Origin: Leucoraja ocellata
Lineage: Eukaryota
Direction: 5' to 3'
Assembly: GCA_036785375.1 (NCBI GenBank)
Contig: JAWMAR010000204.1
Span: forward strand, 4,030,001 to 4,094,000
Length of the DNA stretch: 64,000 nt
A model generated the notes under the pieces. It searched no databases. It was not told the origin of the DNA and was given only the letters and a program-made list of their open reading frames with translations. Position numbers and translations under genes: made by a program. This document shows positions 2,841 to 60,995 of the stretch, in pieces (within the stretch, counting starts at the first letter, position 1; each line of letters begins with the position of its first letter).

Positions 2841-2844
2841 ATTA

Positions 2845-13343: not shown

Positions 13344-14351
13344 ATGAACTACAGAGTTAGTGCTACACTCCTGCTGCTGCTTGGAATTTGTGCAGCTTTG
13401 TCTATGGGTGAGGAAAATACCCTAGATCTTGTCATTTAGAGTCTTTTAGCTTTATAGTTGTAATTAGATTTTTGATTCATTCAGCCAGTTGAAGGAACAG
13501 AAGACAGTTCAACGAATGTTCACTTGGATAATATTAGATATGGATTGTCTTATAATAAATGGATGAAGCGGGTGGGTCTGTACTCATTGTAATTTTAAAA
13601 ATGAGCGGTGATCACACTGAAACATAGAATCCTGAGTGGGTTTGGCAGGTTCTGATTCAAAGACAGTGTGTGTTTTCCAGGTTGTTCTATTTGATGTTCA
13701 GGCTTGCAGGTTACTATGTGTCCAGATGGAACTTGATGTTTCCTTCCTCGGTCTTAGAATAGGCCTTGTTGTAACAGCGCAGAAGGCCAAAGAAGGGGCC
13801 ACATTGTGAACACTGAAAGTAATAAAACTAATTTTAAGGAATATGTCTTTACAACTTGTCATTTGTCTTACAGCGGCTCATAAAGATATCAATTTAGGAT
13901 CACGATGTAGGTGCAGTACGTGTTCAACAAATCGCATGTCCGTGGGTAATATTCATAAAATTGAAATCATCGCAGCGAACAAAGAGTGCAATTACGCGGC
14001 AATCATGTAAGAATTGTTCATGCATTTAAATTTTCATGTTTATATTTCAATGGGTGGGATTCGTGATAATGTGGAGAAATTGTATGAATTGCATTTTATC
14101 GGCAGATCATCTGCCACAAGTGAAAGGAACAAACAAGAGAACTCTGACAATTAAATGATGTTGCAATTTATCCCCCCTCCTCCCCCCCTTCCCCCATCCC
14201 CTCAAAAATTCTAATAACTAGAAAGATAAAATGCCTCCCTTTTCCTTTCAGAGCTCATCAGATTAACCCACGTAAAGAAGTTTGTTTGAGTGGGAAGGCT
14301 GACTGGGTGAAGACGCTTATTATTGGCTTACTGGCCAAAACTGCACAGTAG
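13344..14351 (+). CDS. CXC chemokine copy A (intact, ELR-negative, 98 aa); exons 13344-13407, 13874-14006, 14252-14351
   Basis: Translation: MNYRVSATLLLLLGICAALSM-AAHKDINLGSRCRCSTCSTNRMSVGNIHKIEIIAANKECNYAAII-AHQINPRKEVCLSGKADWVKTLIIGLLAKTAQ*. It has a signal peptide, R-CxC, IxKIEII..C, VCL....WVK and GT-AG introns of phase 1 and 2, as in CXCL genes. A TATA box lies upstream and AATAAA downstream. Confidence 0.92.
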
Positions 14352-14451
14352 GATACATTTTGAAGGGCTTCATTGCCACAATGGTATCCTGAGGTGATGA
14401 AACAGGTTTTATACCTACAAATGTTTTTTTGGTGAAGTGATTTTAATTCTA

Positions 14452-14493
14452 AATAAAAAGGATTGTATCTCTGATAATGATTTAAGCATTAAA
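14452..14493 (+). terminator. Candidate polyadenylation signals of chemokine copy A (AATAAA 14452, ATTAAA 14488)
   Basis: Hexamers 100-140 nt after the stop codon, present in all four copies. Confidence 0.5.
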
Positions 14494-16672
14494 TACATGG
14501 CATTCTAAAATGTATTTGTCTGTTCCTAAATATAATGCCAAATCTTCTATCTCTTCCCTATAAGGGAAAGTCTCCAATATTAACTCATAGAATGAGGTTG
14601 ACAGCAGATCATTCCGCACAGATGTCTTTGCTGGTTATGTATAAGTGATATTCAAGTATTCTCACCTCTAGCTCTTCAAATCCCAACCACCACCAAAACT
14701 CCGCCACCATTTCAGTTATTTTCAAAGCCATGCAAATTTCTCCGCTTTGAAAGTTTTTCCAACTAACTCTTTATTGAAAGTTACCATCAAATCTGCTTCC
14801 ATTGCCTTTTCAGAGAGAAACTCCAGATTAACAACTCTTTTCCTTGTGTTTCTTCTGCAAATGTCTCCACATCCGTGCCCTCTATAGTCACTGATGCTTT
14901 TGCCATGAGCAACACTTTCATCATCCTTCCTCCATTTTATATTTCATGATATACTGGATATTGGATATACAGTATGCTTCAAATCCCACCTTCACTCCAC
15001 CTCTGCCCTGTTAAATAATCCAAGCTTTTCTCAATAAAATAGAGATTCCAAAAACATGGCTTCATTCTTGTAGATCAGCTTTGTGGGACTTTGATTTTGG
15101 ACGTAATTTGGTGCCAAGAACTGGAAGGATTACATCAGCTAGAAACCTATGAAAGGTTTATCTTAGTTCCTCGCTATTTTTTAATTCTATGATGAGATGG
15201 ACAATGCGCAGAATCCCTGTTTCCTTTTTTAATGGCAGTCATTGGCACATCAGGATGGAGGTGATTGAACTTTCCTGATCTGATGACATTGTAAATCCAG
15301 GGGCACGATACTACACCCGACTACGCTTTTTCCAGACACATCTTTCCAGCCACTGCTCCATTCTTTTCAGGGTCTCTATTACTTTGTCATTCACCTTTTC
15401 TCTGTCGGTAACACAAGGAACATTAAATTAAAGTAACCAGAGTAATGTGGATGAATGGCCTTTAGTTTAAGAACATACTTCATATTATTTTCAGCTATAA
15501 GCAGCATGGCACAGCAAGAAATGTGTCTGTCAAGAGCTTGCTATATTATATGTATGAAAAACTGCGTGCGTGCAAGTTTTGTTAATAAACTGCTTTGAAT
15601 CCAATAATCGTATCCTGGTCATCATTTTAAAGAGACACAGGGAGATTGATATGGAACACCAAAGTATCCCCTCCACAAGTCCAAGGAAGTGCAAGAAGTG
15701 GTCTTGTGTGTTCTGTTGCTGAGGTACGATTAGATTTGTTCGGGTCAGTTCAAGAACCTGTCGGTGTAAGAGAGTAACTATTCCTGAACCTGGTGTTGCG
15801 GTGAGTAGTGATCGATGATTCTAACCAGGAGCGTCTAGGACCAGGGGTCGTAGCCTCAGAATAAAATGGTGTTTCTTTAGGAAGTAGATAAGGAGGAATT
15901 TCTTCAGTCAGAGGGTGGTGAATCTGTGAAATTCATTGCCACAGAAGGCTGCGGAGGCCAGGTCAATGGATATTATTAAGGCACTTAGATAGATTCTTGA
16001 TTAGTAAGCATGTCAGGGGTTATGTGGAGAAGGCAGGAGAATGGGGTTGAGGGGGAGAGATAGGTAAATTCTCGTAAACCTCCTCTGGACCCTCTCCAAC
16101 ACCAGCCCATCTTTCTTCAGATATGGGACCCAAAACTGTTCACATTAATCCAAAGGCAGACTGACCAGTGCTTTATGAAGCCTCAGCATTGCATCCCTGT
16201 GTTTGTATTCTAGTCCTCTTGAAATAAATGCTAACATTGTATTTGCTTTTCTTACTAGTGATTATGCAATTTCTCAATATAACTAATGTATAAATCCAAG
16301 GATGCCATCTACCCTTGTGCACCATTCCAAACTTGCCCTGCCAGAGACTTGTGTGGCCCCTCCTTCAGTCCTGCCTCCTACTGTAACGTCACTACTCCAG
16401 TTACAGTATGTTGCCCCTCTACATACTCAAACATTTCTCTTCACATTTTGGTCCATGAGATTTCACTCACCATGTGTCTGCGCACTTCACCAGCCTGTCT
16501 CTGATTCTTGTCCCTCCCACAGTTTACACTATTATATGTTTCCATGTAGTCTGACAAACCAACCTTTCACCCAACTCTGTGCCTTGTCATCGGGTTAAAT
16601 ATACATACAAACTGATTGTCCGTGTCGCAAGAGACACACTGCTGTTAATAATAATAATAATAATAATAATAA

Positions 16673-16820
16673 ATAGGCACGGCCATTATAATTCGGAAAG
16701 GCATACCTTTTAAATTAAAGAAATCCATATCTGATAAAGAGGGAAGATATGTTATAGTCACGGGAGAAATTTACAATACACCATTAACTATGATAAATAT
16801 TTACCCGCCTAATTTTGATA
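16673..16820 (+). mobile_element. Internal L1 endonuclease fragment embedded in an (AAT)n tract (paralog 38161-38308)
   Basis: Translates IGTAIIIRKGIPFKLKKSISDKEGRYVIVTGEIYNTPLTMINIYPPNFDN (APE motifs GxAI, D..GRY, NIYAPN). Confidence 0.8.
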
Positions 16821-16821
16821 A

Positions 16822-18118
16822 TAATAAATAAATGTTATTACGGACTCGAGGTGCAGACAAGGGGCCACATTACATTAAAATGCATTGCATATTAAATATC
16901 ATAAAGTATATATAAATTATATCAAAAAAAAACAACACAATACAGAAGTTAAAAATCCAGATTAAAAGAATGATCAATGTCCTACAACGAGACAAGGATA
17001 CCAGTGTCTCCACAGCTGGGATTCGTAGCGTGTAGTGCTAACCCTTATGTTTGACAAGGCCACAATAATCACATTTTTAGAGTCATTTATCCTACAATGA
17101 ATACATGTGATGTCTTAGGATAGCTTCTAAAGTACTGACTCCTGCAGCCACAAACATATTACTGGCACTACACCATCTAGGTTTCCTTAGCAGTGTTCTC
17201 ATGGCATCGTTATATGCCACCTTTAGTCTCTGCATACTTGTCTTTCCATAGTTCGACCACAGGTGCGCAGTGTAGAGTGGTGTGCAGTATGCTCTAAATA
17301 GCGACATCTTCACCACACCTGCACACGCACCAAATTTACGCAATAGAATATTCGCCTGTACATACAGCATGCGTCGTTGCCTATAAATATCCTCATCATC
17401 TGTCATTTGTTCTGTAATAATATCCCCTAGATATTTTACCTTATTACAGACACTAAGATTATTGTCAGACAATTTAAAATCAGGAAATTGTAGACATTTA
17501 TCCTCTTTGGTTCTACAGATCATAACAGCACTCTTACTAGCATTATATTTAATCTCATGTTCCACACCATACACAGAACATATAGTAAGGAGCTGCTGGA
17601 GGCCAGCGCTAGTTGGACTAAAGACCACAAGATCATCTGCGTACATAATATGGTTCACTAAAATATTACCAATCACGCACCCAGTGTTACAGGCCTTCAG
17701 TTGTTTAGACAGATCATCAATATACAGATTAAAAAGGACTGGGGACAAAATCCCCCCTTGTCTAACACCATTGCTAACCCCAAATGTGGCTGAGACCCTA
17801 TTGCCCCATTTTATTTGCATAGTCTGGTGGGCATACCAGTACGCCAGAATTCTAACAATGTATTTAGGCAACCCTCTTTGACTCATTTTACCAAACAGCT
17901 TTCTGTGATTAACACAGTCAAAGGCTTTGGAAGCATCAATAAAGCACATAAGGATTGAAGAGTTTTTGCCTCTATATTTGTTTACAATCTCCTTTAGGGC
18001 ATACTGTATATGCATAAGTCAGTGCCATGTTTAGCTTTAAAGCCAAACTGGTTATCTGTGGAGTTAACAAACTCATTTATTCTATCCAGCAGAACTCTTT
18101 CTAAAACTTTTGACAAGA
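16822..18118 (-). mobile_element. RTEX-like LINE, 5'-truncated reverse transcriptase
   Basis: ORF 17092-18015 with FIDASKAFD, GVRQGGILSPVLFNLY, YADD, KYLG and LFRAYCTPLY motifs; (TTA)n tail. Confidence 0.85.
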
Positions 18119-18799
18119 ACAATGGAAAAACGTTTAATAATGTTGCACTGAATAAGGCTGCTTGTTCTATTGTGTGTCTGTCAGCTCTGTGAACGCCCAT
18201 CTATACATCAATCATACCACCCTCAGCAACATTTTTTGTTAAATTATCCAAGATCTCAAGGCCAGCATTTATTCCCACCTCGAACTTTTGTTTAGTGTCA
18301 CGTGTACCGAGGTACAGTGAAAAGCTTTTGTTGCCTGCTATCCAGTCAGCAGGAAGACAAAACATGATTGCAATTGAGCCATTTACAGTGTATAGATACA
18401 TGATAAGGGAATAACGTTTAGTGCAAGGTGAAGCCAGCAAAGTCCGATCAAGGATAGTCCAAGGGTCACCAATGAGGTAGATAGTAGTTCAGCATTGCTC
18501 TTTGGTTGTGGTCGGATGATTCAATTGACTGATAACAGCTGGGAAGAAACAGCCCCTGAATCTGGAGGTGTGCGTTTTTACACTTCTATACCTTTTGCCT
18601 GATCGAAGAGGGGAGAAGAGGGAATGGCCAGGGTGCAACTCGTCCTTGATTATGCTGCTGGCCTTGCCAAGGCAGCGTGAGGTATAAATGGAGTCAATAG
18701 AAGGAAGGATGGATTGTGTGATGGTCTGAGCTGGGCTCTGTCCACAATTGGCTGCAATTTCTTGCGGTCTTGGATGGAGCTGTTCCCAACGCAAGCTGA

Positions 18800-19550
18800 T
18801 TAGGAAAAGAAGAGATGTACCGAGACCTGGGTGTCATGGTACACCAGTCATTGAAAGTAGGCATGCAGGTGCAGCAGGCAGTGAAGAAAGCGAATGGTGT
18901 GTTAGCATTCATAGCAAAAGGATTTGAGTATAGGAGCAGGGAGGTTCTGCTGCAGTTGTACAGTGTCTTGGTGAGACCACACCTGGAGTATTGCGTACAG
19001 TTTTGGTCTCCTAATCTGAGGAAAGACATTCTTGCCATAGAGGGAGTACAGAGAAGGTTCACCAAACTGATTCCTGGGATGGCGGGACTTTCAGATGAAG
19101 AAAGACTGGATATACTAGACTTGTTCTCTCTGGAATTTAGAAGATTAAGGGGGATCTTATAGAAACGTACAAAATTCTTAAGGGGTTGGACAGCCTAGAT
19201 TCAGGAAGATTGTTCGCAATGTTGGGGAAGTCCAGAACAAGGGGTCATAGTTTGGGGATAAGGGGGAAGTCTTTTAGGACCGAGATGAGAACATTTTATT
19301 TCACACAGTGAGTGGTGAATCTGTGAAATTCTCTGCCACAGAGGGTGGTTGAGGCCAGTTCATTGGCTATATTTAAGAGGGAGTTAAATGTGGCCCTTGT
19401 GGCTAAAGGGATCAGGGGGTATGGAGAGGAGGCAGGTACAGGATACTGAGTTGGATGATCAGCCATGATCATATTGAATGGCGGTGCAGGCTTGAAGGGC
19501 CGAATGGCCTAATCCTGCACCTTTTTTCTATGTTTTCTACATTTCAATGT
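18800..19550 (+). mobile_element. CR1 LINE 3' fragment (paralog 40275-41020)
   Basis: ORFs 18815-19162 and 40289-40918 carry CR1 motifs. Confidence 0.9.
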
Positions 19551-21881
19551 AAGCTGGGATCCATCCTGATAAAATGTTTTCTTGTCATCACAATTCCCTT
19601 TAAGTATTACTGAATGATTTTAAATTGTGAGAATTCTGCTCAATATAATGTCCCTGCCCTCGTTCACCAATGATAGAGTACAAATTGTGGTGGTGACCCC
19701 ATGAGTTAGCACTCAAACTGTTTTTGATTTCACAACAATTAGAACAGGTTGTTGCACAACATTTCACAACCTGTATTCATGGCCCACCCTTCTCATGAGT
19801 TTATCTCCATCTTTAATATGTTTATTTGATCTCCATGGTCAAATCTTGCATCAAAGCAGACTGTACATTGAATATTACTGTCCTCTCAGTAATTTGCAGT
19901 CTTTCAGTAATTATCAGCACTCGGCTCCTTAGTTCACTCAGCGCTACTATCTGGAAAAAAACAACAAATATTTGTGAGTTGATCCTCTATTATTCTACAT
20001 AATTAAGTGGAGAAAGAGCATGAAATGAGCTGTAATCCCGGCCCCATTTACTTTGCATACAGTAGGCTGGTTGGTTGCTCCTGGATACACACAGTTTACA
20101 TCACTGGAGCAATGTCTTAATCTGTTCATCTATCAATGTTTATATCAGCGTGCAATTAGTGCTCCACTTATTAAGTTCTTAATTAGTGGTCGCAGACCAG
20201 TCCATCACACAATCCAATATCTATTCCATTGGCCCTATCTAAATTTCATGCAGCCTTGGCAAAGCCACCGGCATAATTAAGGACGAGTCTCACTCCAGAC
20301 ATTCCCTCTTCTCCCATCAGCGATACAAGATACAAGATACATTAATTTGTCACATGTGCCAGTTGGCACAGTGAAATGTGTTCACCGTACAGCCATACAA
20401 TACAAATAAAGAACACAACACACGATAGAGTTCAACATAAAACATCCCCACACAGCAGAATCAAAGTTTCCCAGTTTGAGGGAAGGTACCAAAGTCAGTC
20501 TCTCCTCTAATGTTCCCCAATGTTCACCCGTGGTCAGGGCCTCCCCGAGCCTTCCGCAGACGCCGCTACGGGCGGCCCGATGTTCAGGCTCGCTTGCCGG
20601 GGTGATGTAAGTCCGGCGTCGGGGCTGGGGGACCTCCTCAGTGGCTTGGACATCATAGTCGGCCACCTCCTACCGGAGTCCACGGCTCCCAAAGTCCGGA
20701 GGCCGTGCCGGGCGGAGATTCAACGCTGGCGGCCCTCGGCAAAAGGCCCCAGGACTCCGCGATATTGAAGTCAACGCCGCCCGCTCTGGGAGCTCTCCCA
20801 AACCGCTGCTCCACGATGTTGGAGCAGCGGCGTAACACTCCGGAGCTCCAAACGGCGTTCCAGGTAGGCATCGCCCGCTCTGCGGTGAATTTAGCGCTGC
20901 CCCGCCGCTGTTGAAGCTCTGGTCCAGTTCCTGCTTATTGTAACTTTAAAACAATGAGAGCTCATCACACTGAAACATAAACATCCTGAGGGGGTTTGGC
21001 AGCCGTGTGTTGGAAAAATGATCCTGCTTGTAGTAAAGTCTGGGACCAAAACACACCAACGCAGAATAAGGTGGAGATGTCATTTATGAATGAGACAAGG
21101 AAGAATATCTTCCCTCAATTCAGATTCAGATTCAGATTCAATTTTAATTGTCATTGTCAGTGTACAGTACAGAGACAACGAAATGCATTAATACATCAAA
21201 TATCGGTGACTTATCTGAATCCCTTATCCCAGGAAAGGGCTGAATTTTTGAATATATTTCAAAGTGGAGAAAATGTATGTTCTGTAAAAGAATCGAGTGT
21301 AATGGGACAGGGTGGGAGAGCAGATTTGGAACGTTGTATTAGCCATGGTTTTATTGAGCATGAGAGAGGCTCAAGTGCTGAATGGCCTGCTCCTGTTCCA
21401 ATTTCCTACCGTCTCCGTCACACCATTAACTTGTTTTCAGCTTCTTTTTTTAAAAACAAACTGTCTATTTTGATATAATCTACAAATTGCAACATTTCTG
21501 CTTATTATTAATTTGACTATCTTGATGTAATCAGTGTTTTCTGTTGCACCCGTGACCAGTGGCCGTTGCAATTTCATTATACTGAGCAACCCCTAGTTAT
21601 TCAGAATATAAATTACAGAGCAAATAGAAGACACCAAGAAAAACCAACTGGATCAGAAAGGCAAGGCTCGAGAAGACTGGAACTCCGACAATGAACTACA
21701 GAGTTAGTGCTACACTCCTGCTGCTGCTTGGAATTTGTGCAGCTTTGTCTATGGTGAGGAAAATACCCTAGATCTTGTCATTTAGAGTCTTTTAGCTTTA
21801 TAGTTGTAATTAGATTTTTGATTCATTCAGCCAGTTGAAGGAACAGAAGACAGTTCACCGAATGTTGACTTGGATAATATT

Positions 21882-23876
21882 AGATGGCGGACTGCGGGGG
21901 TGATGCGCCGTTGTGTATGGCTGCTCCTCCTGCGGTCCGTCCTTTCTCCCTTTTTTTTTAAATTTATTTTTAGTCCAATTCCTCCCTCTCCCTCCCTACC
22001 TCCTCCTCTTAATCCCCCCCACTCTCTCTCCTCACCTCCCCGGGATCGCGATGTAGGCCACCGCCAGCTCCGTTTTCTCCACAACGTCGGGGATTGAGTT
22101 GTGCTTGAGGTCGGGGGGGGGGGGGGAGGCTGAGCGGCCTGGAGCCGCGGGGGGGGGGGAGGCTGAGCGGCCTGGAGCCGCGGGGGGGGGGGAGGGAGGC
22201 TGAGCGGCCTGGAGCCGCGGGGGGGGGGGAGGGGAGGCTGAGCGGCCTGGAGCCGCGGGGGGGGGGGGGGGGAGGCTGAGCGGCCTGGAGCCGCGGGGGG
22301 GGGAGGCTGAGCGGCCTGGAGCCGCGGGGGGGGGAGGCTGAGCGGCCTGGAGCCGCGGGGGGGGAGGCCTGAGCGGCATGGAGCCGCGGGGGGGGGGGGG
22401 GGGGGGGGAGGCTGAGCGGCATGGAGCCGCGGGGGGGGGGGGGGGGGAGGCTGAGCGGCCTGGAGCCGCTGGGGGGGGGGGGGGGGGAGGCTGAGCGGCC
22501 TGGAGCCGCGGGGGGGGGGGGGGGAGGCTGAGCGGCATGGAGCCCGCGGGGGGGGGAGGGGAGGCTGAGCGGCCTGGAGCCGCTGGGGGGGGGGGGGGGG
22601 GGAGGCTGGAGCGCTGGGCCGCGGGGGGGGGGGGGGGGGAGGCTGAGCGGCCTGGAGCCGGGGAGGCCGAGACTGCGGCCTAGTCCTTGCCCCGGGTCCC
22701 GCTCCTCTCCCTTCCCGTGGGCCAGGTGCGGCAGCGGCCGCCGCCCCCAGACCTCGCCCCAGCCTCATCGCCGTGGTGATTTCGGGTCCACACACGCGGA
22801 TGCCGGGCCCACGCAAGGGGCGACTTTCAGTTGTTTTTGGATCTGCACGCGTGGATACCCTCAGTCACTTCCTCCCACCCTCCATTAACCCCTCTCCCCT
22901 CCCTACCTCCCTCCTCTCCCTCTATCCCCCTTCTCCCCTTATCTCCCTTCTCTAAGATGGCGGACTGCGGGGGTGATGCGCTGTTGTGTATGGCTGCTCC
23001 TCCTGCAGTCCGTCCTTTCTCCCTTTTTTTTTATTTTTGTTTTTAGTCCTGTCTGTGGGAACTTTTAATTGGAAGTCTTCTTTTCTGTGGTGGGTGGGGG
23101 GGGGGGGAAGGGGGAAACTGTTTTGATCCCAGTCCTACCTGGTCGGAGATGCGGTTTTCTTCCGGACCGCTTCTTCGTCCTCTCTGTGCGGCCTACCATC
23201 GAGCTGGAGCAGTGCTGGAGCGACGATTTCCTGCCGGGACTACAGCTTCGCCGGCGGTGCAGATGCTGGGACACCAACACCAACACGGAGCGGGCGATGG
23301 CTTACCGGATCGCCTTCGGGTAAGCTCCGGGGCACTGGGAACGCCGACTGCAACATCGCTGAGCTGCGGCTGCAGAGCGTCCAGCCGCGGGCGGGTGGCC
23401 CAGGATTTTAACACCACGGGGCCTGGTGTCCGAGTTCGCCAATGTCAGCGGTCCAGCCAGCGCGGCCTGAGAACTTTGGACATTGCAGTCTTCAGGGAGG
23501 AAGTGGCCGCTTCAGTCCAGGCCGCTGAAGAATGTTCACCCGACGCCGATGATCCAGCTTCGCGGCAGAGGGCCTGAGAAAATCGAGTTGGCTGAGGAGG
23601 CCACATATAGACCCCGACCTCGGGTGGACTATGAGGGGGAGAGCTGGATATTTTTAGTGCCTTCCTCACAGTGAATTCTGCTGTGGGGGGACGTTTCATG
23701 TTGATTTCTATAGTGTACTGTTCTGTGTCTTTTTCTTTTTCTCTTTTTTGTTTTTGTATATATTGACATTTGGTCTGTTCTATTAATTTAATCAAACTCT
23801 GTAAAGCACTTGGTTCAAATACTGGTTTTGTTGAAAAGTGCTATATAAATAAAGATTATTATTATTATTATTATTA
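21882..23876 (+). mobile_element. ~2 kb GC-rich non-autonomous retroelement in intron 1 of chemokine copy B
   Basis: Absent from copies A and C at the site GATAATATT|AGATATGG. It starts AGATGGCGG, its ~90-nt head is repeated at 22955, and it ends AATAAA plus (TTA)n. Confidence 0.8.
22112..22665 (+). repeat. G-rich minisatellite (Gn-AGGCTGAGCGGCCTGGAGCCGC), roughly 16 units
   Basis: Directly visible tandem repeat with variable poly-G spacers. Confidence 0.95.
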
Positions 23877-38077: not shown

Positions 38078-38079
<2 letters not shown>

Positions 38080-38160: not shown

Positions 38161-38163
<3 letters not shown>

Positions 38164-51029: not shown

Positions 51030-51482
51030 GTTGCCTGGGTTTCAGCACCTAAATTACAGAGAAAGGTTGAACAAGATAGGTCTTTATTCTTTGGAGCGCA
51101 GAAGGTTAAGGGGGGACTTGATAGAGGTCTTTAAAATTATGAGAGGGATAGACGTGGATAAGCTTTCCCATTGAGAGTAGGGAAGATTCAAACAAGAGGA
51201 CATGATTTGAGAATTAAGGGACAAAGGTTTAGGGGTAACATGAGGGGGAACTTCTTTACTCAGAGAGTGGTAGCTGTGTGGAATGAGCTTCCAGTGGAAG
51301 TGATGGAGGCAGGTTCGATTTTATCATTTAAAAATAAATTGGATAGGTACATGGACGGGAAAGGAATGGAGGGTTATGGTCTGAGTGCAGGTGGATGGGA
51401 CTAGGGGAGAATAAGTGTTCGGCACAGACTAGAAGGGCAAGATGGCCTGTTTCCGTGCTGTAATTGTTATATGGTTATATGT
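51030..51482 (+). mobile_element. CR1 LINE 3' fragment (second family)
   Basis: TRGHDLRIKG...FFTQRVVAVWNELP motif. Confidence 0.85.
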
Positions 51483-52148
51483 GGCGTGACTGTTTAAAGG
51501 AAGTCAGAGGTGTAAGGATATATGGCAGTAACACGAGGTTTGGGTAATAACGCCTTGTCTGCCTGCATGAAGCACAGCAGCATTTGATAAGAGAAATCAT
51601 CCCATAGTTTTCATGCAGGCACCACTCCTGTCAGAAATGCTCAAAGCCACTTCACAGAGATCGCTAATAGTGATTTAACACTGAAAAATATTGTTGCAAA
51701 ATCAATTCTAAGCTATTATTTTTACCATAACTTTTCTTTTATTTCTTTAAAACCCAGTAAAATGTCTTCAATAGATTTATTTTTAGTTTCCACATATCCC
51801 TATTGTGAGCATTCAAGAAATATTTTTAACTGCTCTGCGGTTTTCTGATTTGCATTTAAAATATCGCTTGCATCTGTCTTTGGAGGGCTCGATATTTCTT
51901 CAGCCACCAGCTCAATATACCTGTTAAACCCTTTAGTTTGTCCTTATTAATACGTAAGTTTTTTTTTTACTTGTTAGTTTTTTCAGCCCATATTACTGTC
52001 ACCATTCTTTGCATCTCACTTCATCTGTGGGTCTCTACTGCTTCTTGCACTGTTTAGAGCCAAAACTGGATTTATTTACTAAGAAAAATCATTGCAAGCT
52101 GTCCAGTTGTGGTTGGATGGATGTCTGAATTAATTTCAGTTGCATTTT

Positions 52149-52236
52149 TTATTTTTAAAACTCCCCAATCAAAGGCAGCGGATCCAGCTTCTGGTTTCTG
52201 TCTAAAGCTATGTCTTAAAATGGAACCGAAAATAGT
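52149..52236 (+). promoter_or_regulatory. JCHAIN proximal promoter: MEF2-consensus site and Ets-IRF composite element
   Basis: TTATTTTTAA (52149-52158) fits YTAWWWWTAR. GGAACCGAAA (52222-52231) fits the EICE consensus GGAANNGAAA. Both lie 140-225 nt upstream of the ATG. Confidence 0.45.
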
Positions 52237-52372
52237 TTGAAGCTAATTAAAGGAACAAATTCAAAAAAACAGGCAAAACACTTTGGTCTTTCGTTTTGTG
52301 TGAGCACTCTGATCAGACTACGTGTAGAGCCACAAGACAAACGGAAGATCAAAGAAGGTGAAGCTCCCAGTT

Positions 52373-55300
52373 ATGAAGAACAAACAAGTACTGAAGCCTT
52401 TTGCAGCAATTCTGCTTTTCACAATTCTTGCAGCAGGTGTGGTGTTTAATTATGACATTTTTCATTGTTCAATGTGATGCGTAAATATTTCCTGTTTTCT
52501 TGGCAATAGAAATCTCAAAAGTATAAAAACTAAAAAATAATGAAGAAGTTTTCTTCCTAAATAATGAGAAGCAACAAGAATGAGTTGACTGTTTGTGGAG
52601 ACAGTGGTACAAGCCTAGATTAGACTAGATGTGAATTGATTTGTGGACTGTACGAGCACTAGAGCGGCACAGTGGTGCAGCTGGTAGAGCTGCTGCCTCA
52701 CAACACCAGGTTCGATCCTGACCTTGGGTGCTGTCTGTGTGGTGTTTGCACGTTCTTTCTGCGATCGCTCGGATTTCCTCGCTGTGTTCTGGTTTTCCCC
52801 CACATTCCAAAGACGTGCGGGTTTGTAGGTTAATTTGCCTCTGTAACTTGTCCCTAATGTGTAGAGAGTGGATGAGAAAGTGGGATAACATAGAACGTGT
52901 GATAGTCGATATATCGATGGTCAGCATGGACTCGAAAGGCTGAAGGGCCTGTTTCCATGGTATATCGTATACTCATGCAGTCTCTTTGCAGATGAATATG
53001 ATCACCTCCGCATGCAGCGGTCCCAGTGAATTATGAATGATAACATTGTTCTTGCTGTGTATCCCGTGGCCATGAATGTGCATCTTTGGCATATCTTGAC
53101 TTTTTTTAAATAGAAGTTACTAATTGTGTAATTCCTCCCAAACCTGAGCACCCACTTAAAATGAGTTTCTGCTACAGAGGTTTTAGTTTCTACTCACCAT
53201 AAATTAACTCCAGATTACCGGTAGTTCCAATGTCAATCTGTAACACATGGACCTGAAGAAAGGGAATATTAATTCCCAACTCATCAATTGAGGAGCTCGG
53301 ATTCTTTATTTCCATTTAGTTATTTAAGCAAAGTGTCATAACAGGTCCTAAAGCATCCCATACTGATATCCATACCCAAGCAGATAGGACACTGCTATAT
53401 TGGGCCTCCTTGACTATTAATTAAGACTTTTAGAAATAAATAAAACAAAAATAAACTAAAAAACTTAATGAAAAGATTTAAAATTCAAGTAAAATGCAAT
53501 TGTTGAATATAAATGTATAAATAAATGGTCAGATTCACAAAAGGTTATTACAATTTTTAAAATCACATATAAAGCAAATTTAAAAACTGTTCTGTTTCCT
53601 AAAACTCTACTACATTTCAAAGACTCCAAAATACATTATTTCATGAATTAATTCAAATGAACTAATAAATGAGTGTTAACTTTGATGATACGTGCAATTT
53701 TTTTCATGTTCTTGCATTTATTACTTGACTACCCTCTACCTCAACCCGATCAATGCGAGTTGAACCTGGTGCCGAACGCATACTCACTGCCAAAAACGAG
53801 ACATTTACGTTTCTAACGCCAGCCATTATAATACTATTTTTGAATAAGATAACCACATCTTTGCTCAGAGCGACGTCAGGAGTGCATGTTAAGTAATAAA
53901 TGGAAGAAATTGAAAAAAGAATCGCAAGCATCACCAAGGTTAAAACCAAAAATCTAATTTTTAATATAAATGCATTTTGAAAAATAACACTACTAGGGAA
54001 GATCTATCTGGTAAAAGATACCAGTGAGATTGTATTGAACACTAAGTGAACGGAGCACTTTTGAAATTAATATCTTATATCCCGAGGGAAATAAAATATC
54101 AACGACACAAAACAAAACGCAAATCAAAGGAAAATTGAATGAATGTAAATGGTAAAAGCTAAAGGAAAAACATAATGGATTTTTGGTAAATAAATCTTCA
54201 AGGCATGATGATTTTCACTGTAGGAATTTTTTTTAAATCTTAAGTATTGTAAAATAATTTATATCATTTTTCAGAGCTCTGCTATCACCACATTATTTTA
54301 GATGAGATAAACCAGATAACCACAAATCCGTCGGCTTAGATATTATTCCGGTCCCCATGTTTGTGATGAATGTTTATGGCATGTTGGTGGGCCAGCACTC
54401 ATCTGCCAGAAGGTACAGAGATCTGTGAAACAGAGTGACTGAGCAACTACAGTTCACATTCTATGTCCATTTAGATATCATGTCAAATCTCCACACTCGT
54501 ACTTGCTACATCGCTGGGTAGCAATGTTGGTTGTGATGAGGGTGCAGAGGCTTCAGGAAAACAGGCAGGAACTGATTGTGGCAACATGTACATTTGTACA
54601 CTTTGGTAGAAAAAATTGAAAGGTAGCGTCTTTTTAAGTAATTAAAGATTGAATGACGTGATAGAGGAATCTGCGTGACCATTTACATGAATTACTAAAA
54701 GATAGCATGCAGGCACAACATGTCTTGAGTTATGTTGGCTTTTATTGCAAGAGGATTCGAGTACAAAAATACAAATGGCTTAAACAATTATCTAGGTTTA
54801 CTGAGGCTGCATTTAAAATATTGTGTACATAGAAACATAGAAAATAGTTGCAGGAGGAGGCCATTCGGCCCTTCAAGCCAGCACAGCCATTCATTGTGAT
54901 CATGGCTGATCGTCCCCTATCAATAACCCGTGCCTGCCTTCTCCCCATATCCCTTGACTCCACTAGCCCCTAGAGCTCTATCTAACTCTCTCTTAAATAC
55001 ATCCAGTGGTTTGGCCTCCACTGCCCTCTGTGGCAGGGAATTCCATAAATACATTCATACATACAAACATCAGGAGAAGTATAAAGAACAGGGGAGAGAC
55101 AAGACTTTGCCTTCCATCACAGTGAGGAGGTGTTTGGAGATTCAATGTGATGGATGTTTGTGTAAATTGTGTTAATTGTGTGTCTTGTTTTTTTTTTCTT
55201 CTTCGTACAACTGCAGAAACGACATTTTGTTTGAACTTAGGTTCAAACGCCAATAAACGGTATTTTATCTTATCTTATCTTACCTTATAGTTTTTTTTCT

Positions 55301-58300
55301 GTACTCGCAAGCCAATTAACAGATACGTTCAATTTGCGCCTGGATTTGCTGGACATTGTAACTTCCACACTTATTATAAATGCTACTGATTCAGAAAGCT
55401 AATAACCATGTCTATTTTCTTACAGCTGATGCTGAAAGCCACCTTCTAGTTAAATCAGAATGTAAATGCATGACTGTCACAGCCAAAACAGTTGTTTCTG
55501 CATTGCCTAATGGCGAACCTGTGGAGCAGCTCATGAGGGATATACACATTGTGTAAGTAAATGCATTTTTACATGTCAACTAGACCAAGTGCAGACCCGT
55601 TGGGTCTGTTTTCCCAAAGCGCATTTGCAAGGGGGGGGGGGGTCAATGTACCCACATGGTTGAAAACAAGAAAAGACTAATTATTGGAGACTGTAGGCAT
55701 TTTTGTGCTGCGGTTCATCCAATCCTTATCACTAAAAGGAGGCAATCAATATACATGTCAGAGTCAGACCATCTTCTTCCTTCGTGTGGCGTGTACAGCC
55801 TAAAGTTGTTGAACAACTTGTTCTATTTGATTTTCCATTTGTGTACGTCGAGTCGATTGCATTAGTCGAAACAGGGCGGACCACGTGAAGGTTGCAATCT
55901 TCCACCCCAGAGTCAGACCATAACACAACCCCTAACAACCATTCTGATTCCTTGCTTGAGTTATTTCCTGCTTGCTCTGTATTCCCCGAAGGCCCTGTCT
56001 GATTTCATCTTCCTGAACCTTACATATGTTTCCTTTTACTTTTTGACCAAATTTAAAACGTCTCTTATCACCCAAGGCTCTCTTCCTTTGCCATCTTTCT
56101 CCCTCCTCCTTGCTGGAACATGCTGATCCTCAACTCTGATTAACTCTGATACTTTTTAGCTAAATACCAAATATCTGATGTGGACTTCTCCATAAATGCT
56201 GCTCCCAATATGCTCTCCGAAGCTCCTGCCGAATAATGTTATACTCTGCTTTATCCAAATTTAGTACTTTTGTCAATTGGTCCAGATTTTTCCCTCTTCA
56301 TAACTATCTTAAAACTTATGGAGTTGTGATCACAGTTCCTAAAATGTTCTTCCACAGAAACACCTGACCAGGTTCATTTCCCAATACAGGTCCAGTATGG
56401 TCCCTCCACTAGTTGAACAATCCACAAATTGGTTCAAGAAACCCTTTTGGATGCACCTTACAAATTCTGCCCTGTCCTAATCTTTTGCACTAAGGAAATC
56501 CCAGTCAATATTGGGGAAGTTAAATTCACTCATTATAACACCACCATTAATATTGACTCTTCCCACAGTCTATCTACATATCTGTCCCTCTATCTCCTGC
56601 TGGCTATTGTGAGGACTATAGTATAATCCCATCAGAGTGATTGCAGGTTTCTTATTTTTGAGCTTTCCTCATATTACCTCAGTGGATGAGCCCTCTGTGC
56701 CTTCTCTGAGTGCCACTGTGACATTCTCCCTGATTAGTAATGCAAATCCTCCGCCTCTTTACCTCCCTCTCTATTACGTCTGAAACATTAAAACTCTGAA
56801 AACATTGTGCTGTCAGTCCTGTCCCTCTCGCAACCAAGTCTCCATAATGGCCACAACATTATAGTTCCATGCCACTACGAGATGAATTACCCTGACATGC
56901 TCCAATTATTCATGTTGGTGCATATTTCTCTAAATAAAGTGAACACTGTCGCTGCACAAAGATAAACATTGAAAATAGTGGTATCCATAGTGAAGATTGC
57001 CACAGAGAACTGACCATGTCTTCACTGAATGAAGAGTTATGCCCTGTCCCACTTAGCAAACCTGAACGGAAACCTCTGGAGACTTTGCGCCCCACCCAAG
57101 GTTTCCGTGTGGTTCCCAGAGGTTTTTGTCAGTCTCCCTACCTGCTTCCACTACCTGCAACCTCCGGCAACCACCTGCAACCTCCGGGAACCGCACGGAA
57201 ACCTTGGGTGGGGCGCAAAGTCTCCAGAGGTTTCCCGTTCAGGTTTCCTAAGTGGGACAGGGGCATAAGCTGTTGTTTTGTTTGCTGGGCGGGCAATTCA
57301 TAGAAAAAGTAGTAGGGGTGGCACAGTAGTAGAGTTGCTGCCTTACAGCGCCAGTGACCTGCATTCCATCCTGATTACGGGTGCTCACTCTGTGGAGTTT
57401 GTACGTTCTCCCTGTGACCACGTGGGTTTTCTCCAGGTGCTCTGGTTTCCCCTCACACTCCAAAGTTGTACAGGTTTGTAAATTTAATTGCCTTCCGTAT
57501 GTTGTACAAAAATTGTCACTAATATGTAGGATATTGTTAATATAGTATATGGGGAGATCGGCGGTTGGCACGGACTCGGTGGGCTGAAGGGCCTGTTTTC
57601 TAAAGTAATGTCTAGTGACTATAAGAAGTACTAGGCTATGGAAAAGAATAGATGTATCTAATCATCTGTGAAAGACCAATCCATCCCTGAATGTCCTAAC
57701 ATAATGCAATACCTTTCCATTTCATTATGTGAAAGACAACTTCCTGGAATAATTTCCAAGAGATAATGAATTTACAAGCTGAATTAAAAAGTTCACTGCA
57801 TATTATTTTCTGGAGCAACCTTATATCATCCAAAACCAACTCAGTTTCAACTTGGTATAGTCTTTATACTGGGTGAGGTTTGCTATTTAACGTGTACAAT
57901 CATTATGCAGGATGCTGTTCTTTTCTATTGCTACAGTAATTACTACTTAGCCATAGGCAATAATCTTCAAATGATTATTTTAATTCTTGACTTTCTTCCT
58001 TCAATTACTGATATTGCCTACTCACATCTACAATGGTTGGACAATCACAGCTGTCCATGCTGTCAGCTGAAAGGTCTCCATGTGCAGAATGACTTCATGG
58101 CATTTGGCTGCCAATTTCTGGCAATGTTAAAATGGGTCTTAATTGTTCTTTTATTGCAGAGTTCCCACGAGGAGCAGAGAGAACCTTTCAGATCCAACCT
58201 CCCCTCTTCGGAGCAAGTTTGTCTACAAAATTTCAGATTTGTATGATTTATATTTTTATCTCTTTTTTTGTGCAATTTATAATTAGAGCAGGTTTCAGAA

Positions 58301-60995
58301 CACAGCCTACACCTGACATCTGGGAAATAGATCTGGTATTCAAATTTTAATACGTGGTGTAATTCGCAACAACAGCTACAATCAGGCCTCCTTGAGCCAT
58401 TTCTGAATATTCAGCAACAACTGAATAACTCAGGCTGAACGGTGGTGTCATTAGTAGAGCGGCTGTCTTCTGCTCCTGTGATCTTAGCCCCAGACCTCGG
58501 CTGCTGTTTCATGGAGTTTGTACTATTTCTCTGTGACTATGTGGGATCCTGAATATTCTGGTTTCCTCCACGTTTATAAATCATGAAGGTTGGCGGGTTA
58601 CCAGGCCATTCTCTATCACCGCTAATGTGTAGATGAGTGGTAGAATCTGAGGAAACGTTAATCGTGAATGTGGGGAGAATAAAACGAATTAGTGTTAAAT
58701 AATTAGGATTCGTGTTAAATCGGATGCATGATGGTTTGCTGCTGACTAGGTGAGCCAACAGACCCATCTCCCTGCTGTTTTTCAATATGACTCCATCATT
58801 GTATGAAAGCTTCAGTTGGACATTTTGGCAAAAAGGAGATCTAAAGGTATATTCAGAATAGTTTTAGTTTTTAATATTGCCAGAAGAACCATCTTCGCAG
58901 ATAAGTGAACGGGTAAAATAGTCAAAACAACTGAGTAAATCAGCAGAAAAAGACACAAAATGCAGGAGTAACGCAGCGGGTCAGGCAGCATCTCTGGAGA
59001 ACGTGGATGTGATGTTTCGGGTCAGGAGCCTTCTGCAGACCTCCTTGTATCTACAAGGAAATGAGCAGAATGTTTACATATCGAGGGTTATTCAGATTTG
59101 TGATACATCATTATACATAATGTGAAAGAGCAACTTCCAATAACAATAGAAACTATATTTAAAGAGGACTCATTTGCAGAGTTTGGGAGAAAAAGCTGGA
59201 AGTGGGTATGAACTTCACATTTATGTTGAGACACCACAAACATGGCAGTCTGAATGATTTCCAATGTTCCAAAGTTGTGCTCAATGGCATATTGACAATG
59301 GTGAAAGGACAACAAAATAAGTGGTGATATGTGGTTTAGATTAAAACCAGAATGTACCTAACAGTTCATGTTCTCATGGCTCAGATATAACTGATGGAAG
59401 TTTCCTTTAAATGCATAAAGGGATCTTTTATTTATTTGATAAATAGTTCCAAGACAATTCTCTGTCATGTTTTCATTCATGTTGCGTTGGTTTGACGGAT
59501 CGACTTCAAGTGAAATGATAGGGAACACCTATATTTACACAGTTAAATATTTTTATGGCTTTCTTCCAATGTAAGTATGAAGGACCCTTGGTTGACGTGG
59601 GATATTGAGGCATTGGAAAGGAAAATGGAGGCATATTTCAGGGATAGGCATCTGGGATCAAGTGAGTCCCTTGAGGAGTATAAGAGATGTAGGGCTATAC
59701 TGAAGAAGGAAATCAGGAGGGCAAGAAGAGGAACTCCTGAATAGTAAGTTTGTGGACTACATCAATATTGGTGATGTAGTGGATAATGAAGACAGTTATC
59801 TAAGATGACAACAGGAGTTGGATGAATTGGGGGAGGAATATAGTAAATATAATGCTATTTGATATAATAAATCAAATAGTACTTTATCTCTGAGGGGACC
59901 GTTCTCCTCTAAATGATATTAATGTGAGAACTCTTTGCATTAAATGTAACAAAAAATGTTTTGAACTACAAAAAATATTAAACTTTAGAATACCTGCAGG
60001 ATACATAGATGGCCAAAGGGAATTGCAGATGGAATTTCTTAAGGAATTGCAGATGGAATTTAACTTTGACAAGTGCCTATTGCAAGTTAAACCTGGGCAT
60101 GATGTACACAGTGAATGGTAGGACCCTGGAGAGTATTGTAGAATGCAGGGGCTTAGAGTTACATGTGCATTGTTCCCTGAAAGTGGCAACACAGATAGAA
60201 AGGGGGGGGGGGTGGGGGGGGGGGGGGGGGGATGAAGAAGGTGCTTGGCACACTTCTCTTCATTGGTTCGGGGCTATTTCCATTGACTATAGCAATGTGG
60301 ACATCATGTCACAGTTGTAAAAGTGGTGGTGAGACCACACTTGGTGTTCTCCGTGCAGTCCTGCTCGCCAAGCTACAGGAAATATGTCATCAATCTGATA
60401 AGGGGATAGAAGAGATTTATGGGGATGTAACAGGAATTGGAGGGCTTGAGTTACAAAGAGAGGCGAAATGGGCTGGGATTTTGACCCCTGGATTGTCGGA
60501 GGTAGAGTGGAGACCTTATAGAGGTGTATGTGATCAGGAGGAGTGTGAAGAAAGTGGATGGTCACAGCATATTCCCAGAGCAGGGATTCTAAAACTAGAG
60601 AGCATAGATTTAAGGTGAGGGGGGGAGGATTTCAAGGTATAATTTTCATCCATGTAGATGGTGATGGGCTTAGAGAACGAGCTACCAGAATGAGTTGTAG
60701 AGGTTGATATAGTTACAATGTTTAAAAACATTTGGACAGATAAGTGGATAGAAAAGATTCAGAGGGATAGAGGAAACTGGGCTAGCTCAGTTTGACATGT
60801 TGGTCAGCATGGGGGAGTTGGCATATTTCTGTGCGGCATAGCTCTATGACTGTGTTAATGAGAAATATATATTTGATTGATTGTATATTTTGTTGCAGCT
60901 GCAAGAATTGCAACCAAAAGCCAACTTTACCTGAAGAGCCCCAATGCAAACCCCCACCTCCCCCTGCAGACACCTGCTACGGCCGTGACATCTAG
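52373..60995 (+). CDS. JCHAIN: Immunoglobulin J chain; coding exons 52373-52436, 55426-55552, 58160-58240, 60899-60995 (64+127+81+97 nt = 122 aa + stop)
   Basis: Spliced translation with GT-AG introns (phases 1,2,2): MKNKQVLKPFAAILLFTILAA-ADAESHLLVKSECKCMTVTAKTVVSALPNGEPVEQLMRDIHIV-VPTRSRENLSDPTSPLRSKFVYKISDF-CKNCNQKPTLPEEPQCKPPPPPADTCYGRDI*. It contains the J-chain hallmarks CKC, RENxSDPTSPLR (N-glycosylation block), FVY, CKxC and TCY, plus a hydrophobic signal peptide. Confidence 0.95.
52662..52962 (+). mobile_element. V-SINE in JCHAIN intron 1
   Basis: tRNA-like head GGCACAGTGGTGCAGCTGGTAG, B-box GGTTCGATCC and V-domain. Confidence 0.8.
54826..55285. mobile_element. CR1 3' end (-, 54826-55050) abutting a retroelement tail (+, 55050-55285, (TTATC)n)
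   Basis: CR1 3'UTR motifs; tail module shared with 9840-10008. Confidence 0.7.
55580..55645 (-). mobile_element. Helitron 3' terminus in JCHAIN intron 2
   Basis: CTAGACCAAGTGCAGACCCGTTGGGTCTG is the reverse complement of the termini at 29809 and 30412. Confidence 0.7.
57040..57265. mobile_element. PIF/Harbinger-like MITE in JCHAIN intron 2
   Basis: Long TIRs TGCCCTGTCCCACTTAG...CCTCTGGAGACTTTGCGCCCCACCCAAGGTTTCCGTG; TTA/TAA flanks. Confidence 0.85.
57315..57600 (+). mobile_element. V-SINE (a more decayed copy lies at ~58435-58785)
   Basis: Head and V-domain as in other copies. Confidence 0.75.
59570..60850 (+). mobile_element. Old degenerate CR1 fragments in JCHAIN intron 3
   Basis: WQMEFNxDKC-like and VRPHL-like remnants; CR1 3'UTR remnant just before exon 4. 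Confidence 0.65.

What the first reader, a model, noticed from the sequence alone, without database searches (positions are those of the whole stretch)
13344..60995. Amplified CXC chemokine array directly upstream of JCHAIN, same strand and matching exon architecture
Seen: three full-length chemokine gene copies and JCHAIN are all on +, and I found no other gene in the ~16.6 kb between copy C and JCHAIN. Both gene types have a 64-nt signal-peptide exon, a phase-1 intron, an exon 2 of similar size (133 vs 127 nt) with a CxC at nearly the same offset (GSR-CRC vs KSE-CKC) ending in hydrophobic residues (AAI|I vs IHI|V), and a phase-2 intron. Known: JCHAIN has been proposed to be a co-opted CXCL chemokine gene, and human JCHAIN lies in the same chromosomal band as the CXCL8 cluster. 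Inference: this locus may preserve, in a cartilaginous fish, the tandem chemokine neighbourhood from which J chain arose. The neighbouring chemokine may be an uncharacterised lineage.
Basis: partly seen in the sequence, partly recalled or inferred. Interest (0 to 1): 0.9.

Follow-up and report, generated by a model that had tools for sequence, protein, structure and literature searches.

The report
Chemokine gene copies upstream of JCHAIN
Recently duplicated copies of a small CXC chemokine gene sit just upstream of the immunoglobulin J-chain gene on the same strand, which fits a 2024 paper that already reported this arrangement in sharks and argued that J chain evolved from such a chemokine.

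Summary
A 98-aa CXC chemokine gene has three coding exons of 64, 133 and 100 nt. It lies on the + strand at 13344-14351 (A), 21691-24690 (B) and 34778-35790 (C). A four-exon JCHAIN (64/127/81/97 nt, intron phases 1-2-2) follows at 52373-60995. The 16,582 nt between C and JCHAIN show only retroelement debris. Spliced contigs from two public runs reproduce both chemokine introns exactly.

Four caveats apply:
- Copy B carries three 1-nt deletions, all in homopolymer runs, so it is broken as assembled.
- A fourth relic, exon 3 only, lies inverted at 4305-4404.
- The chemokine stops in exon 3, so the architectural match with JCHAIN ends after intron 2.
- The repeat units are 96-98% identical, so the amplification is young, not an ancient preserved array.

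Kawasaki et al., PNAS 2024, report jchain downstream of cxcl genes in whale shark, six other elasmobranchs and elephant shark. The chemokine could not be assigned to a CXCL group: exon-level searches found only weak, non-significant matches or nothing. The scan's earlier notes on this same window cover the paralogue divergence, the extra cysteine and the short J chain. Verdict: real, ordinary instance of a published arrangement; low to moderate interest.

The parts
13344..13407 (+). Chemokine copy A, exon 1 (64 nt, signal peptide, phase-1 donor GTGAGG)
   Evidence: A spliced contig covers 13290-13406 with the joint to 13873.
13874..14006 (+). Chemokine copy A, exon 2 (133 nt). Holds the CRC motif, an extra Cys (STC) and the third canonical Cys.
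   Evidence: Pfam IL8 PF00048 positions 1-34 of 60, 18.1 bits, E 0.0032. Joints on both sides.
14252..14351 (+). Chemokine copy A, exon 3 (100 nt including TAG). Holds the fourth Cys and the DWV motif. This is the last coding exon.
   Evidence: Pfam IL8 positions 41-57, 13.5 bits. A contig runs unbroken from 14252 to 14403. AATAAA at 14452-14457.
21691..21753 (+). Chemokine copy B, exon 1. It has 63 nt because one G of a GGG run at the exon end is missing.
21885..23869 (.). About 2 kb insertion in intron 1 of copy B. It is G+C-rich and holds a 37-nt G-rich minisatellite at 22113-22660.
24215..24345 (+). Chemokine copy B, exon 2. It has 131 nt: two 1-nt deletions in A runs, 11 mismatches to A, and the frame is broken as assembled.
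   Evidence: An in-frame transcript of this type exists in run X16.
24591..24690 (+). Chemokine copy B, exon 3 (100 nt, 3 mismatches to A)
34778..34841 (+). Chemokine copy C, exon 1 (identical to A)
35308..35440 (+). Chemokine copy C, exon 2 (1 difference from A, Asp to Asn)
   Evidence: Pfam IL8 E 0.0031.
35691..35790 (+). Chemokine copy C, exon 3 (1 difference from A, Ile to Ser)
   Evidence: Pfam IL8 14.9 bits.
4305..4404 (-). Inverted relic D, exon 3 only. The stop is changed to a sense codon. Exons 1 and 2 are absent.
10670..41684 (+). Tandem segmental duplication that carries the chemokine units. 10670-20216 matches 32114-41684 at 96.5-97.8%. B-unit pieces match at 96-97.7%.
35791..52372 (.). 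Interval of 16,582 nt between copy C and JCHAIN, with retroelement ORFs only
   Evidence: No further chemokine or J-chain exon by tblastn.
52373..52436 (+). JCHAIN exon 1 (64 nt, hydrophobic signal peptide, donor GTGTGG). This is a model only.
55426..55552 (+). JCHAIN exon 2 (127 nt, CKC motif)
   Evidence: Pfam Ig_J_chain positions 2-39, E 0.0033.
58160..58240 (+). JCHAIN exon 3 (81 nt)
   Evidence: Pfam Ig_J_chain 37.8 bits, above the cut-off of 27. PDB J chains, E 1e-7.
60899..60995 (+). JCHAIN exon 4 (97 nt including TAG). It is proline-rich, has 4 Cys, and ends soon after TCY.
   Evidence: No Pfam hit.

Best explanation
The window holds one species' copy of the conserved CXCL-JCHAIN neighbourhood. 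JCHAIN is a four-exon gene with phases 1-2-2 and encodes a short, uncharged J chain with six cysteines. Upstream on the same strand lies a cluster of a small, basic, secreted CXC chemokine gene. That cluster was amplified recently by tandem and inverted segmental duplication. It now consists of two intact copies (A, C), one divergent copy that is broken as assembled (B), and one exon-3 relic (D).

Shown here: the gene structures, the spliced transcripts of the chemokine, the expression of at least two sequence types, and the J-chain identity of exons 2 and 3.

Inferred: the chemokine acts as an ordinary secreted chemoattractant through a CXC receptor. Its paralogues are diverging in exon 2, the part of a chemokine that by general knowledge carries the N-loop contacting the receptor. 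The adjacency to JCHAIN descends from the arrangement in which JCHAIN arose by duplication of a neighbouring CXCL gene, as proposed by Kawasaki et al. 2024.
For: - Gene tables with GT..AG introns and phases.
- Spliced contigs with both chemokine joints in X16 and X20.
- Pfam IL8 matches for exon 2 (profile positions 1-34, 18.1 bits) and exon 3 (positions 41-57, 13.5 bits), collinear.
- An ungapped 31-residue alignment to CXCL10 from CXC to the third Cys, E 0.79.
- Net charge +6 and five Cys in the mature chemokine. Net charge 0 and six Cys in the mature J chain.
- J chain exon 3 scores 37.8 bits against Ig_J_chain and E 1e-7 against PDB J chains.
- Repeat units are 96-98% identical.
- Exon 2 differs 8.4% between A and B, against 2.0-2.9% in the flanking introns.
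- All 9 of the 9 changed codons listed for the X16 transcript change the amino acid.
- Only retroelement families were found among 240 long ORFs scanned.
- The published model and the same gene order in elasmobranchs (PMC10801876, whole text).
Against: - Each chemokine exon alone scores below Pfam's gathering score of 21.3.
- No relative of exon 2 was found in two very large protein searches, so orthology with the cxcl genes that flank jchain in other elasmobranchs is not shown.
- The chemokine lacks the ELR motif and the fourth exon that the paper gives for most CXCL genes.
- The taxon was never verified, because organism names were coded.
- JCHAIN splicing and JCHAIN exon 1 have no read support.
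- The runs with spliced contigs are labelled 'RNA?' only by guess, so a processed DNA copy would give the same joints.
Confidence: 0.85

Rival explanations
1. The adjacency is secondary. A lineage-specific, fast-evolving chemokine family expanded or was moved next to JCHAIN recently, so it says nothing about the origin of J chain.
For: - Units are 96-98% identical, and the array includes inverted and truncated pieces in a retroelement-rich setting.
- No relative of exon 2 was found.
- The best PDB matches are non-significant and go to different chemokine groups: CXCL10 at E 0.79 and CCL20 at E 1.5.
- The gene has three coding exons, not four.
Against: Kawasaki et al. report cxcl genes upstream of jchain in whale shark, six other elasmobranchs and elephant shark. 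A recent amplification of a resident gene explains the high identity equally well.
Confidence: 0.1
2. Some copies are assembly artefacts. Either haplotypes were laid in tandem, or a repeat was badly polished, so the true copy number is lower and copy B's frameshifts are errors.
For: - All three deletions in B lie in homopolymer runs (GGG, AAA, AAA). An in-frame B-type transcript exists.
- A and C differ by only 2 coding bases.
Against: - There are no N gaps.
- The units carry different insertions: about 2 kb in B intron 1, and different downstream segments.
- Contigs from X16 and X20 together show at least three distinct exon-2 or exon-3 sequence types. Several genes or alleles therefore exist independently of this assembly.
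Confidence: 0.08

Closest known systems
CXCL-JCHAIN linkage in cartilaginous fish (Kawasaki, Ohta, Castro, Flajnik, PNAS 2024, PMC10801876)
   Same: - JCHAIN lies downstream of cxcl genes on the same strand.
- JCHAIN has four exons with phases 1-2-2.
- Both genes have the signal-peptide boundary at the exon 1/2 junction and a CXC early in exon 2.
- Exons 1 and 2 have similar sizes.
- The J chain is neutral.
   Different: - Here the flanking chemokine has only three coding exons and no ELR motif.
- It is present as very similar recent copies.
- Whether this species and this gene are in the paper's Dataset S1 could not be seen, because supplements are closed.
CXC chemokines, Pfam IL8 (PF00048), e.g. 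human CXCL10 and CXCL8
   Same: - It has a signal peptide, a CXC motif and four canonical cysteines.
- The spacing between the second and third Cys is 24 residues, as in CXCL10 (ungapped alignment).
- It has a WV motif after the fourth Cys.
- The mature protein is basic.
- Intron phases are 1 and 2.
   Different: - The A/C type has a fifth cysteine three residues after the CXC motif. The expressed B type has Phe there.
- It has GSR in place of ELR.
- The stop lies in exon 3.
- Similarity to any one solved chemokine is not significant.
Tetrapod J chain (PDB 6kxs_J and others)
   Same: - Exon 3 is highly similar (E 1e-7).
- Exon 2 matches the start of the Ig_J_chain profile.
- It has the CXC motif and the same gene structure.
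   Different: - It has six cysteines; that tetrapod J chains have eight comes from recall, not from a call.
- It has 122 aa in all.
- Its last exon is short and proline-rich, with no Pfam match and no C-terminal extension.
- Its net charge is 0, whereas tetrapod J chains are acidic.

Membership tests
CXC chemokine (Pfam IL8, PF00048) | Match to the family profile at or above the gathering score of 21.3 bits | tested here: inconclusive
   Exon 2 scores 18.1 bits (profile positions 1-34). Exon 3 scores 13.5 bits in A and 14.9 bits in C (profile positions 41-57 and 41-59). The two matches are collinear, but each is below the cut-off. The joined protein was not searched, by rule.
CXC chemokine (Pfam IL8, PF00048) | CXC motif plus two further cysteines at canonical spacing | tested here: met
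   CRC and a third Cys are in exon 2, and a fourth Cys is in exon 3. An ungapped alignment to CXCL10 runs from the CXC motif to the third Cys.
CXC chemokine (Pfam IL8, PF00048) | Secreted, with an N-terminal signal peptide on its own exon | tested here: inconclusive
   Exon 1 has 21 codons with a hydrophobic core. No signal-peptide predictor was available.
CXC chemokine (Pfam IL8, PF00048) | Chemotactic activity through a CXC receptor | not testable with these tools
   This needs recombinant protein and cells.
CXCL8-like genes of cluster A (criteria quoted by Kawasaki et al. 2024) | ELR motif before the CXC | tested here: not met
   The residues before the CXC are G-S-R.
CXCL8-like genes of cluster A (criteria quoted by Kawasaki et al. 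2024) | WV motif at the specific position | tested here: met
   D-W-V follows the fourth Cys in exon 3 of A and C. The B type has L-W-V.
CXCL8-like genes of cluster A (criteria quoted by Kawasaki et al. 2024) | Conserved Glu residue at the specific position | not tested
   The position is defined in a cited paper and in supplements that I did not see.
CXCL8-like genes of cluster A (criteria quoted by Kawasaki et al. 2024) | Four exons with phases 1-2-2 | tested here: not met
   The gene has three coding exons with phases 1 and 2, and the stop is in exon 3. A transcript contig runs unbroken across the stop to 14403.
Immunoglobulin J chain (Pfam Ig_J_chain, PF15097) | Match to the family profile above the gathering score of 27 bits | tested here: met
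   Exon 3 alone scores 37.8 bits. Exon 2 scores 17.8 bits at profile positions 2-39, collinear with exon 3. PDB J chains match at E 1e-7.
Immunoglobulin J chain (Pfam Ig_J_chain, PF15097) | Four exons with phases 1-2-2 and CXC in exon 2 | tested here: met
   Exon 1 is a model without read support.
Immunoglobulin J chain (Pfam Ig_J_chain, PF15097) | Eight cysteines and a C-terminal extension, as in tetrapods (number recalled, not from a call) | tested here: not met
   It has six cysteines, and exon 4 encodes only 31 residues. The paper calls the elasmobranch C-terminal region 'unique'.
Immunoglobulin J chain (Pfam Ig_J_chain, PF15097) | Neutral or basic charge, as reported for cartilaginous fish J chains | tested here: met
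   The net charge of exons 2-4 is 0.
Chondrichthyan JCHAIN synteny block | jchain lies downstream of cxcl genes | tested here: met
Chondrichthyan JCHAIN synteny block | anxa5 lies near jchain and cluster A | not testable with these tools
   Only 3 kb of the window lie beyond JCHAIN. No Pfam family other than RVT_1 and one weak chance-level hit was found there. The scan's notes hold no 'annexin'.

The most novel reading that the evidence does not exclude
The chemokine beside JCHAIN is a lineage of its own and not a CXCL8 orthologue. It has an odd number of cysteines: a free Cys three residues after the CXC in the A/C type, replaced by Phe in the expressed B type. It may therefore form covalent dimers or adducts. 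That would make it a living analogue of the step by which a neighbouring chemokine acquired disulfide bonding to immunoglobulin tails and became J chain.
Probability: 0.06. Interest if true: 0.65.

Novelty: already known. Interest (0 to 1): 0.28.

Why it matters
The origin of J chain was an open question for fifty years, until the 2024 synteny and gene-structure argument. This window is a clean, compact illustration of that argument: a same-strand chemokine with the same first two exon sizes and phases, 16.6 kb upstream of JCHAIN. It adds no new principle.

What may be of use to specialists is the chemokine itself. It is expressed and recently amplified. It diverges mainly at amino-acid-changing sites of exon 2. 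It carries a polymorphic fifth cysteine and has no detectable close relative in the protein collections searched. It is a candidate for functional comparison with elasmobranch J chain.

Tried and rejected
Steps that led nowhere or were limited:
- Exhaustive phmmer of the 43-aa exon-2 peptide against 1.84 billion representatives gave 0 hits at E 0.001 or better. The query is too short for distant relatives at that database size, so this blank says little.
- The search for homologous proteins was run with the natural 66-aa stop-to-stop ORF around exon 2, chosen so that 36-115-aa proteins were in range. No candidate shared three words.
- PDB sequence searches of chemokine exons 2 and 3 gave only non-significant best hits, to CXCL10 and CCL20. 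No CXCL group could be assigned.
- I looked for direct chemokine to J-chain similarity. Exon 2 was marginal and driven by the CXC. Exon 3 showed none. tblastn found no cross-hit at E up to 50.
- Rfam gave no match.
- I looked for other genes. Pfam on 90 ORFs in the interval and on 150 of 151 long ORFs elsewhere gave only RVT_1, ALKBH8_N and one weak Glam1 hit (E 0.0064), which I take for chance. The dropped ORF was window:2-346:+, left out to fit the cap. Exons shorter than 60-75 aa would be missed by this scan.
- One search was a crude divergence count with wrong offsets. One search supersedes it.
- Bulk RNA run X24 gave 0 reads from about 5% of the run, which is no test. Single-cell run X22 gave 2 partial reads on a low-complexity stretch, which I ignored.
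- The taxon could not be verified, because organism names were coded.
- The paper PMC4198949 is not held. [quoted passage not shown]
- Literature searches since 2024 for 'J chain' + chemokine + shark listed 5 papers, and only Kawasaki et al. is relevant by title. I did not see Datasets S1-S4 of that paper. They may list this species, this locus and this chemokine.
Whole-protein Pfam scoring, phylogeny and structure prediction were therefore left out.
Full report
1. WHAT IS IN THE SEQUENCE

The window has no N. A six-frame motif search puts the chemokine motif GSRCRC on the + strand at 13897, 24238 and 35331. It puts the J-chain motif KSECKC on + at 55452. I read the DNA and tabulated exons, splice sites and phases.

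Chemokine copy A:
- Exon 1 is 13344-13407 (64 nt, donor GTGAGG).
- Exon 2 is 13874-14006 (133 nt, donor GTAAGA).
- Exon 3 is 14252-14351 (100 nt, ending in TAG).
- The product has 98 aa, and the intron phases are 1 and 2.

Chemokine copy C has the same layout at 34778-34841, 35308-35440 and 35691-35790.

JCHAIN:
- The exons are 52373-52436, 55426-55552, 58160-58240 and 60899-60995 (64/127/81/97 nt).
- The product has 122 aa, the phases are 1-2-2, and all introns are GT..AG.

The CXC motif begins 32 nt into exon 2 of the chemokine and 35 nt into exon 2 of JCHAIN. The distance from the stop of C to the ATG of JCHAIN is 16,582 nt.

2. IDENTITY OF THE TWO GENE TYPES, EXON BY EXON

Chemokine:
- Exon 2 matches Pfam IL8 (PF00048) at profile positions 1-34 of 60, with 18.1 bits.
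- Exon 3 matches positions 41-57, with 13.5 bits in A and 14.9 bits in C.
- The two matches are collinear, but each is below the gathering score of 21.3.
- The best solved-structure match of exon 2 is human CXCL10. It is an ungapped 31-residue alignment from the CXC to the third cysteine, but E is only 0.79.
- The best match of exon 3 is CCL20 at E 1.5.
- The mature chemokine has five cysteines and a net charge of +6.

JCHAIN:
- Exon 3 scores 37.8 bits on Pfam Ig_J_chain, above the cut-off of 27.
- Exon 2 scores 17.8 bits at profile positions 2-39.
- Exon 3 also matches solved J chains at E 1e-7.
- Exon 4 has no Pfam match.
- The mature J chain has six cysteines and a net charge of 0.
- Exon 1 is a model only. 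Among the 11 candidate signal-exon rows listed upstream of exon 2, it is the only 64-nt one and has the most hydrophobic core.

3. TRANSCRIPTS

Of 24 coded runs I laid four on 13200-14600.

Two small 2016 runs of organism A are labelled 'RNA?' by guess (X16, X20). Both hold contigs that skip exactly 13407-13872 and 14007-14251, with GT..AG ends. One 407-nt contig in X16 spans all three exons and runs on unbroken to 14403. So there is no further intron before the AATAAA at 14452.

Reservations:
- The RNA label is a guess.
- The table of the joined form in DNA runs was not given, so a processed DNA copy is not formally excluded.
- The bulk RNA run X24 gave no read from about 5% of the run, which is no test.
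- X22 gave two partial reads on a low-complexity stretch.
- No reads were laid on JCHAIN, because the single call was used on the chemokine.

4. THE ARRAY IS YOUNG AND MESSIER THAN 'THREE FULL-LENGTH COPIES'

Self-comparison shows that 10670-20216 matches 32114-41684 at 96.5-97.8%. B-unit pieces match A at 96-97.7%. Window 1-4585 is an inverted copy of 24416-29022 at 95.8%.

Exon-level comparison shows four things:
- A and C differ by two coding bases, and both change an amino acid.
- Copy B has all three exons. It lacks one G of a GGG run at the end of exon 1 and one A in each of two A runs in exon 2, so the frame is broken as assembled. It also has about 2 kb inserted in intron 1, including a G-rich 37-nt minisatellite.
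- An inverted relic at 4305-4404 keeps exon 3 only, and its stop is changed to a sense codon.
- tblastn with the window's own exon peptides finds no further chemokine or J-chain exon.

A and B differ by 8.4% in exon 2, against 2.0-2.9% in the flanking introns.

The X16 transcript is of the B type but in frame. All 9 of its 9 listed changed codons alter the amino acid. One of them replaces the extra cysteine with phenylalanine.

X20 holds an A-like exon 2 that keeps that cysteine. It also holds an exon 3 of the relic type. Of the 8 changed codons listed for X20, 7 change the residue, counting stop to Ser, and 1 is silent.

So several sequence types exist and are expressed independently of this assembly. 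Copy B's three homopolymer deletions may be real or may be assembly errors. I could not tell which.

5. NOTHING ELSE IN THE WINDOW

- Of 90 ORFs of 60 aa or more between C and JCHAIN, 3 hit reverse transcriptase and 1 hit ALKBH8_N. I take the latter, from recall and from no call, to be part of a retroelement ORF.
- Of 150 of the 151 ORFs of 75 aa or more elsewhere, 2 hit reverse transcriptase and 1 hit Glam1 weakly, at E 0.0064.
- Rfam gave nothing.
- Short exons would escape this scan.

6. COMPARISON WITH WHAT IS KNOWN

I read the whole text of Kawasaki, Ohta, Castro and Flajnik, PNAS 2024 (PMC10801876). It states the following:
- JCHAIN is linked to CXCL clusters in all gnathostomes that have it.
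- Both gene types have four exons with phases 1-2-2, the signal-peptide boundary at the exon 1/2 junction, and a CXC at the same place in exon 2.
- Cartilaginous-fish J chains are neutral or basic, with a 'unique' C-terminal region.

The window fits every one of these statements for JCHAIN.

The window departs from the paper's generalisation in the flanking chemokine. It has GSR in place of ELR, three coding exons, a fifth cysteine in two copies, and no assignable CXCL group. It does have the WV motif.

Nomiyama et al. 2013 (PMC3568907, passages only) count four CXCL8-group genes in elephant shark. I could not compare sequences.

Sequence similarity between this chemokine and the adjacent J chain is marginal. 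BLASTP gives E 0.024 over 17 residues. In a shuffle test, 137 of 5000 shuffles reach the exon-2 score, and there is nothing for exon 3. This agrees with the paper's remark that homology programs see no relationship.

Two large protein searches with exon 2 found no relative. Both were limited by the short query.

7. READING AND SCORES

Most likely (0.85), this is one species' instance of the published CXCL-JCHAIN neighbourhood. The resident chemokine has recently been amplified and is diverging in exon 2.

Rivals:
- The adjacency is secondary (0.10).
- Part of the copy number, or copy B's frameshifts, is an assembly artefact (0.08).

The taxon (cartilaginous fish) was not verified by any search. 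The short, neutral, six-cysteine J chain and the gene order are consistent with it.

The scan's earlier notes on this same window cover the paralogue divergence, the extra cysteine and the short J chain. I partly tested all three. Supplementary tables of the 2024 paper, which I could not open, may already list this locus.

Novelty: already known as a kind. Interest is low to moderate. The boldest reading that remains open concerns the free-cysteine chemokine next to JCHAIN, as a functional analogue of the transitional form. I put it at about 6%.

Noticed in passing
window 22113-22660 (inside the insertion 21885-23869): A G-rich minisatellite of about 15 copies of a 37-nt unit lies in a roughly 2 kb G+C-rich insertion (62.6% GC in 22001-24000). 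The insertion is specific to intron 1 of chemokine copy B.
   Followed up: partly
window 1-4585 versus 24416-29022: An inverted duplication of 4.6 kb at 95.8% identity. At 4583 it switches directly into an inverted copy of the region upstream of copy A (4583-7414 matches 12689-9846). As a result, exons 1 and 2 are missing from the inverted chemokine relic.
   Followed up: partly
window 1042-1712, 6484-7145, 10114-10784, 18881-19549, 27320-27990, 40355-41017, 44669-45011, 61764-62423, 63357-63860: An interspersed repeat of about 670 bp is present in at least nine places, on both strands, at 77-98% identity. It is probably a retroelement tail. It has no Pfam hit in its ORFs.
   Followed up: no
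window 17095-18018 (-), 43277-44023 (-), 48080-48574 (-): Reverse-transcriptase ORF fragments (E 4.7e-27 and 2e-25) and an ORF with an ALKBH8_N match (E 1.3e-11). These are retroelement debris around and between the genes.
   Followed up: partly
window 13323 and 14521 (run X20): Two different X20 contigs carry the same 22-25 loose letters just before they start to fit the window, at 13323 and at 14521. This looks like a library adaptor. It would put one cDNA 5' end 21 nt before the chemokine ATG, and it shows a second transcribed piece at 14521-14600.
   Followed up: no
window 14254-14393 (run X20, record 4) versus relic at 4305-4404: A contig in X20 carries the relic-type exon 3, with stop to Ser and the same four other listed changes. 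So a copy with a slightly longer C-terminus may be transcribed somewhere, although the window's relic lacks exons 1 and 2.
   Followed up: partly
window 38080-38160: A perfect (TAA)27 microsatellite lies at the junction of two duplicated blocks downstream of copy C.
   Followed up: no
window 60899-60995: J chain exon 4 encodes only 31 residues, with a run of five prolines. The protein ends five residues after the last Cys. There is no Pfam match for this exon.
   Followed up: partly
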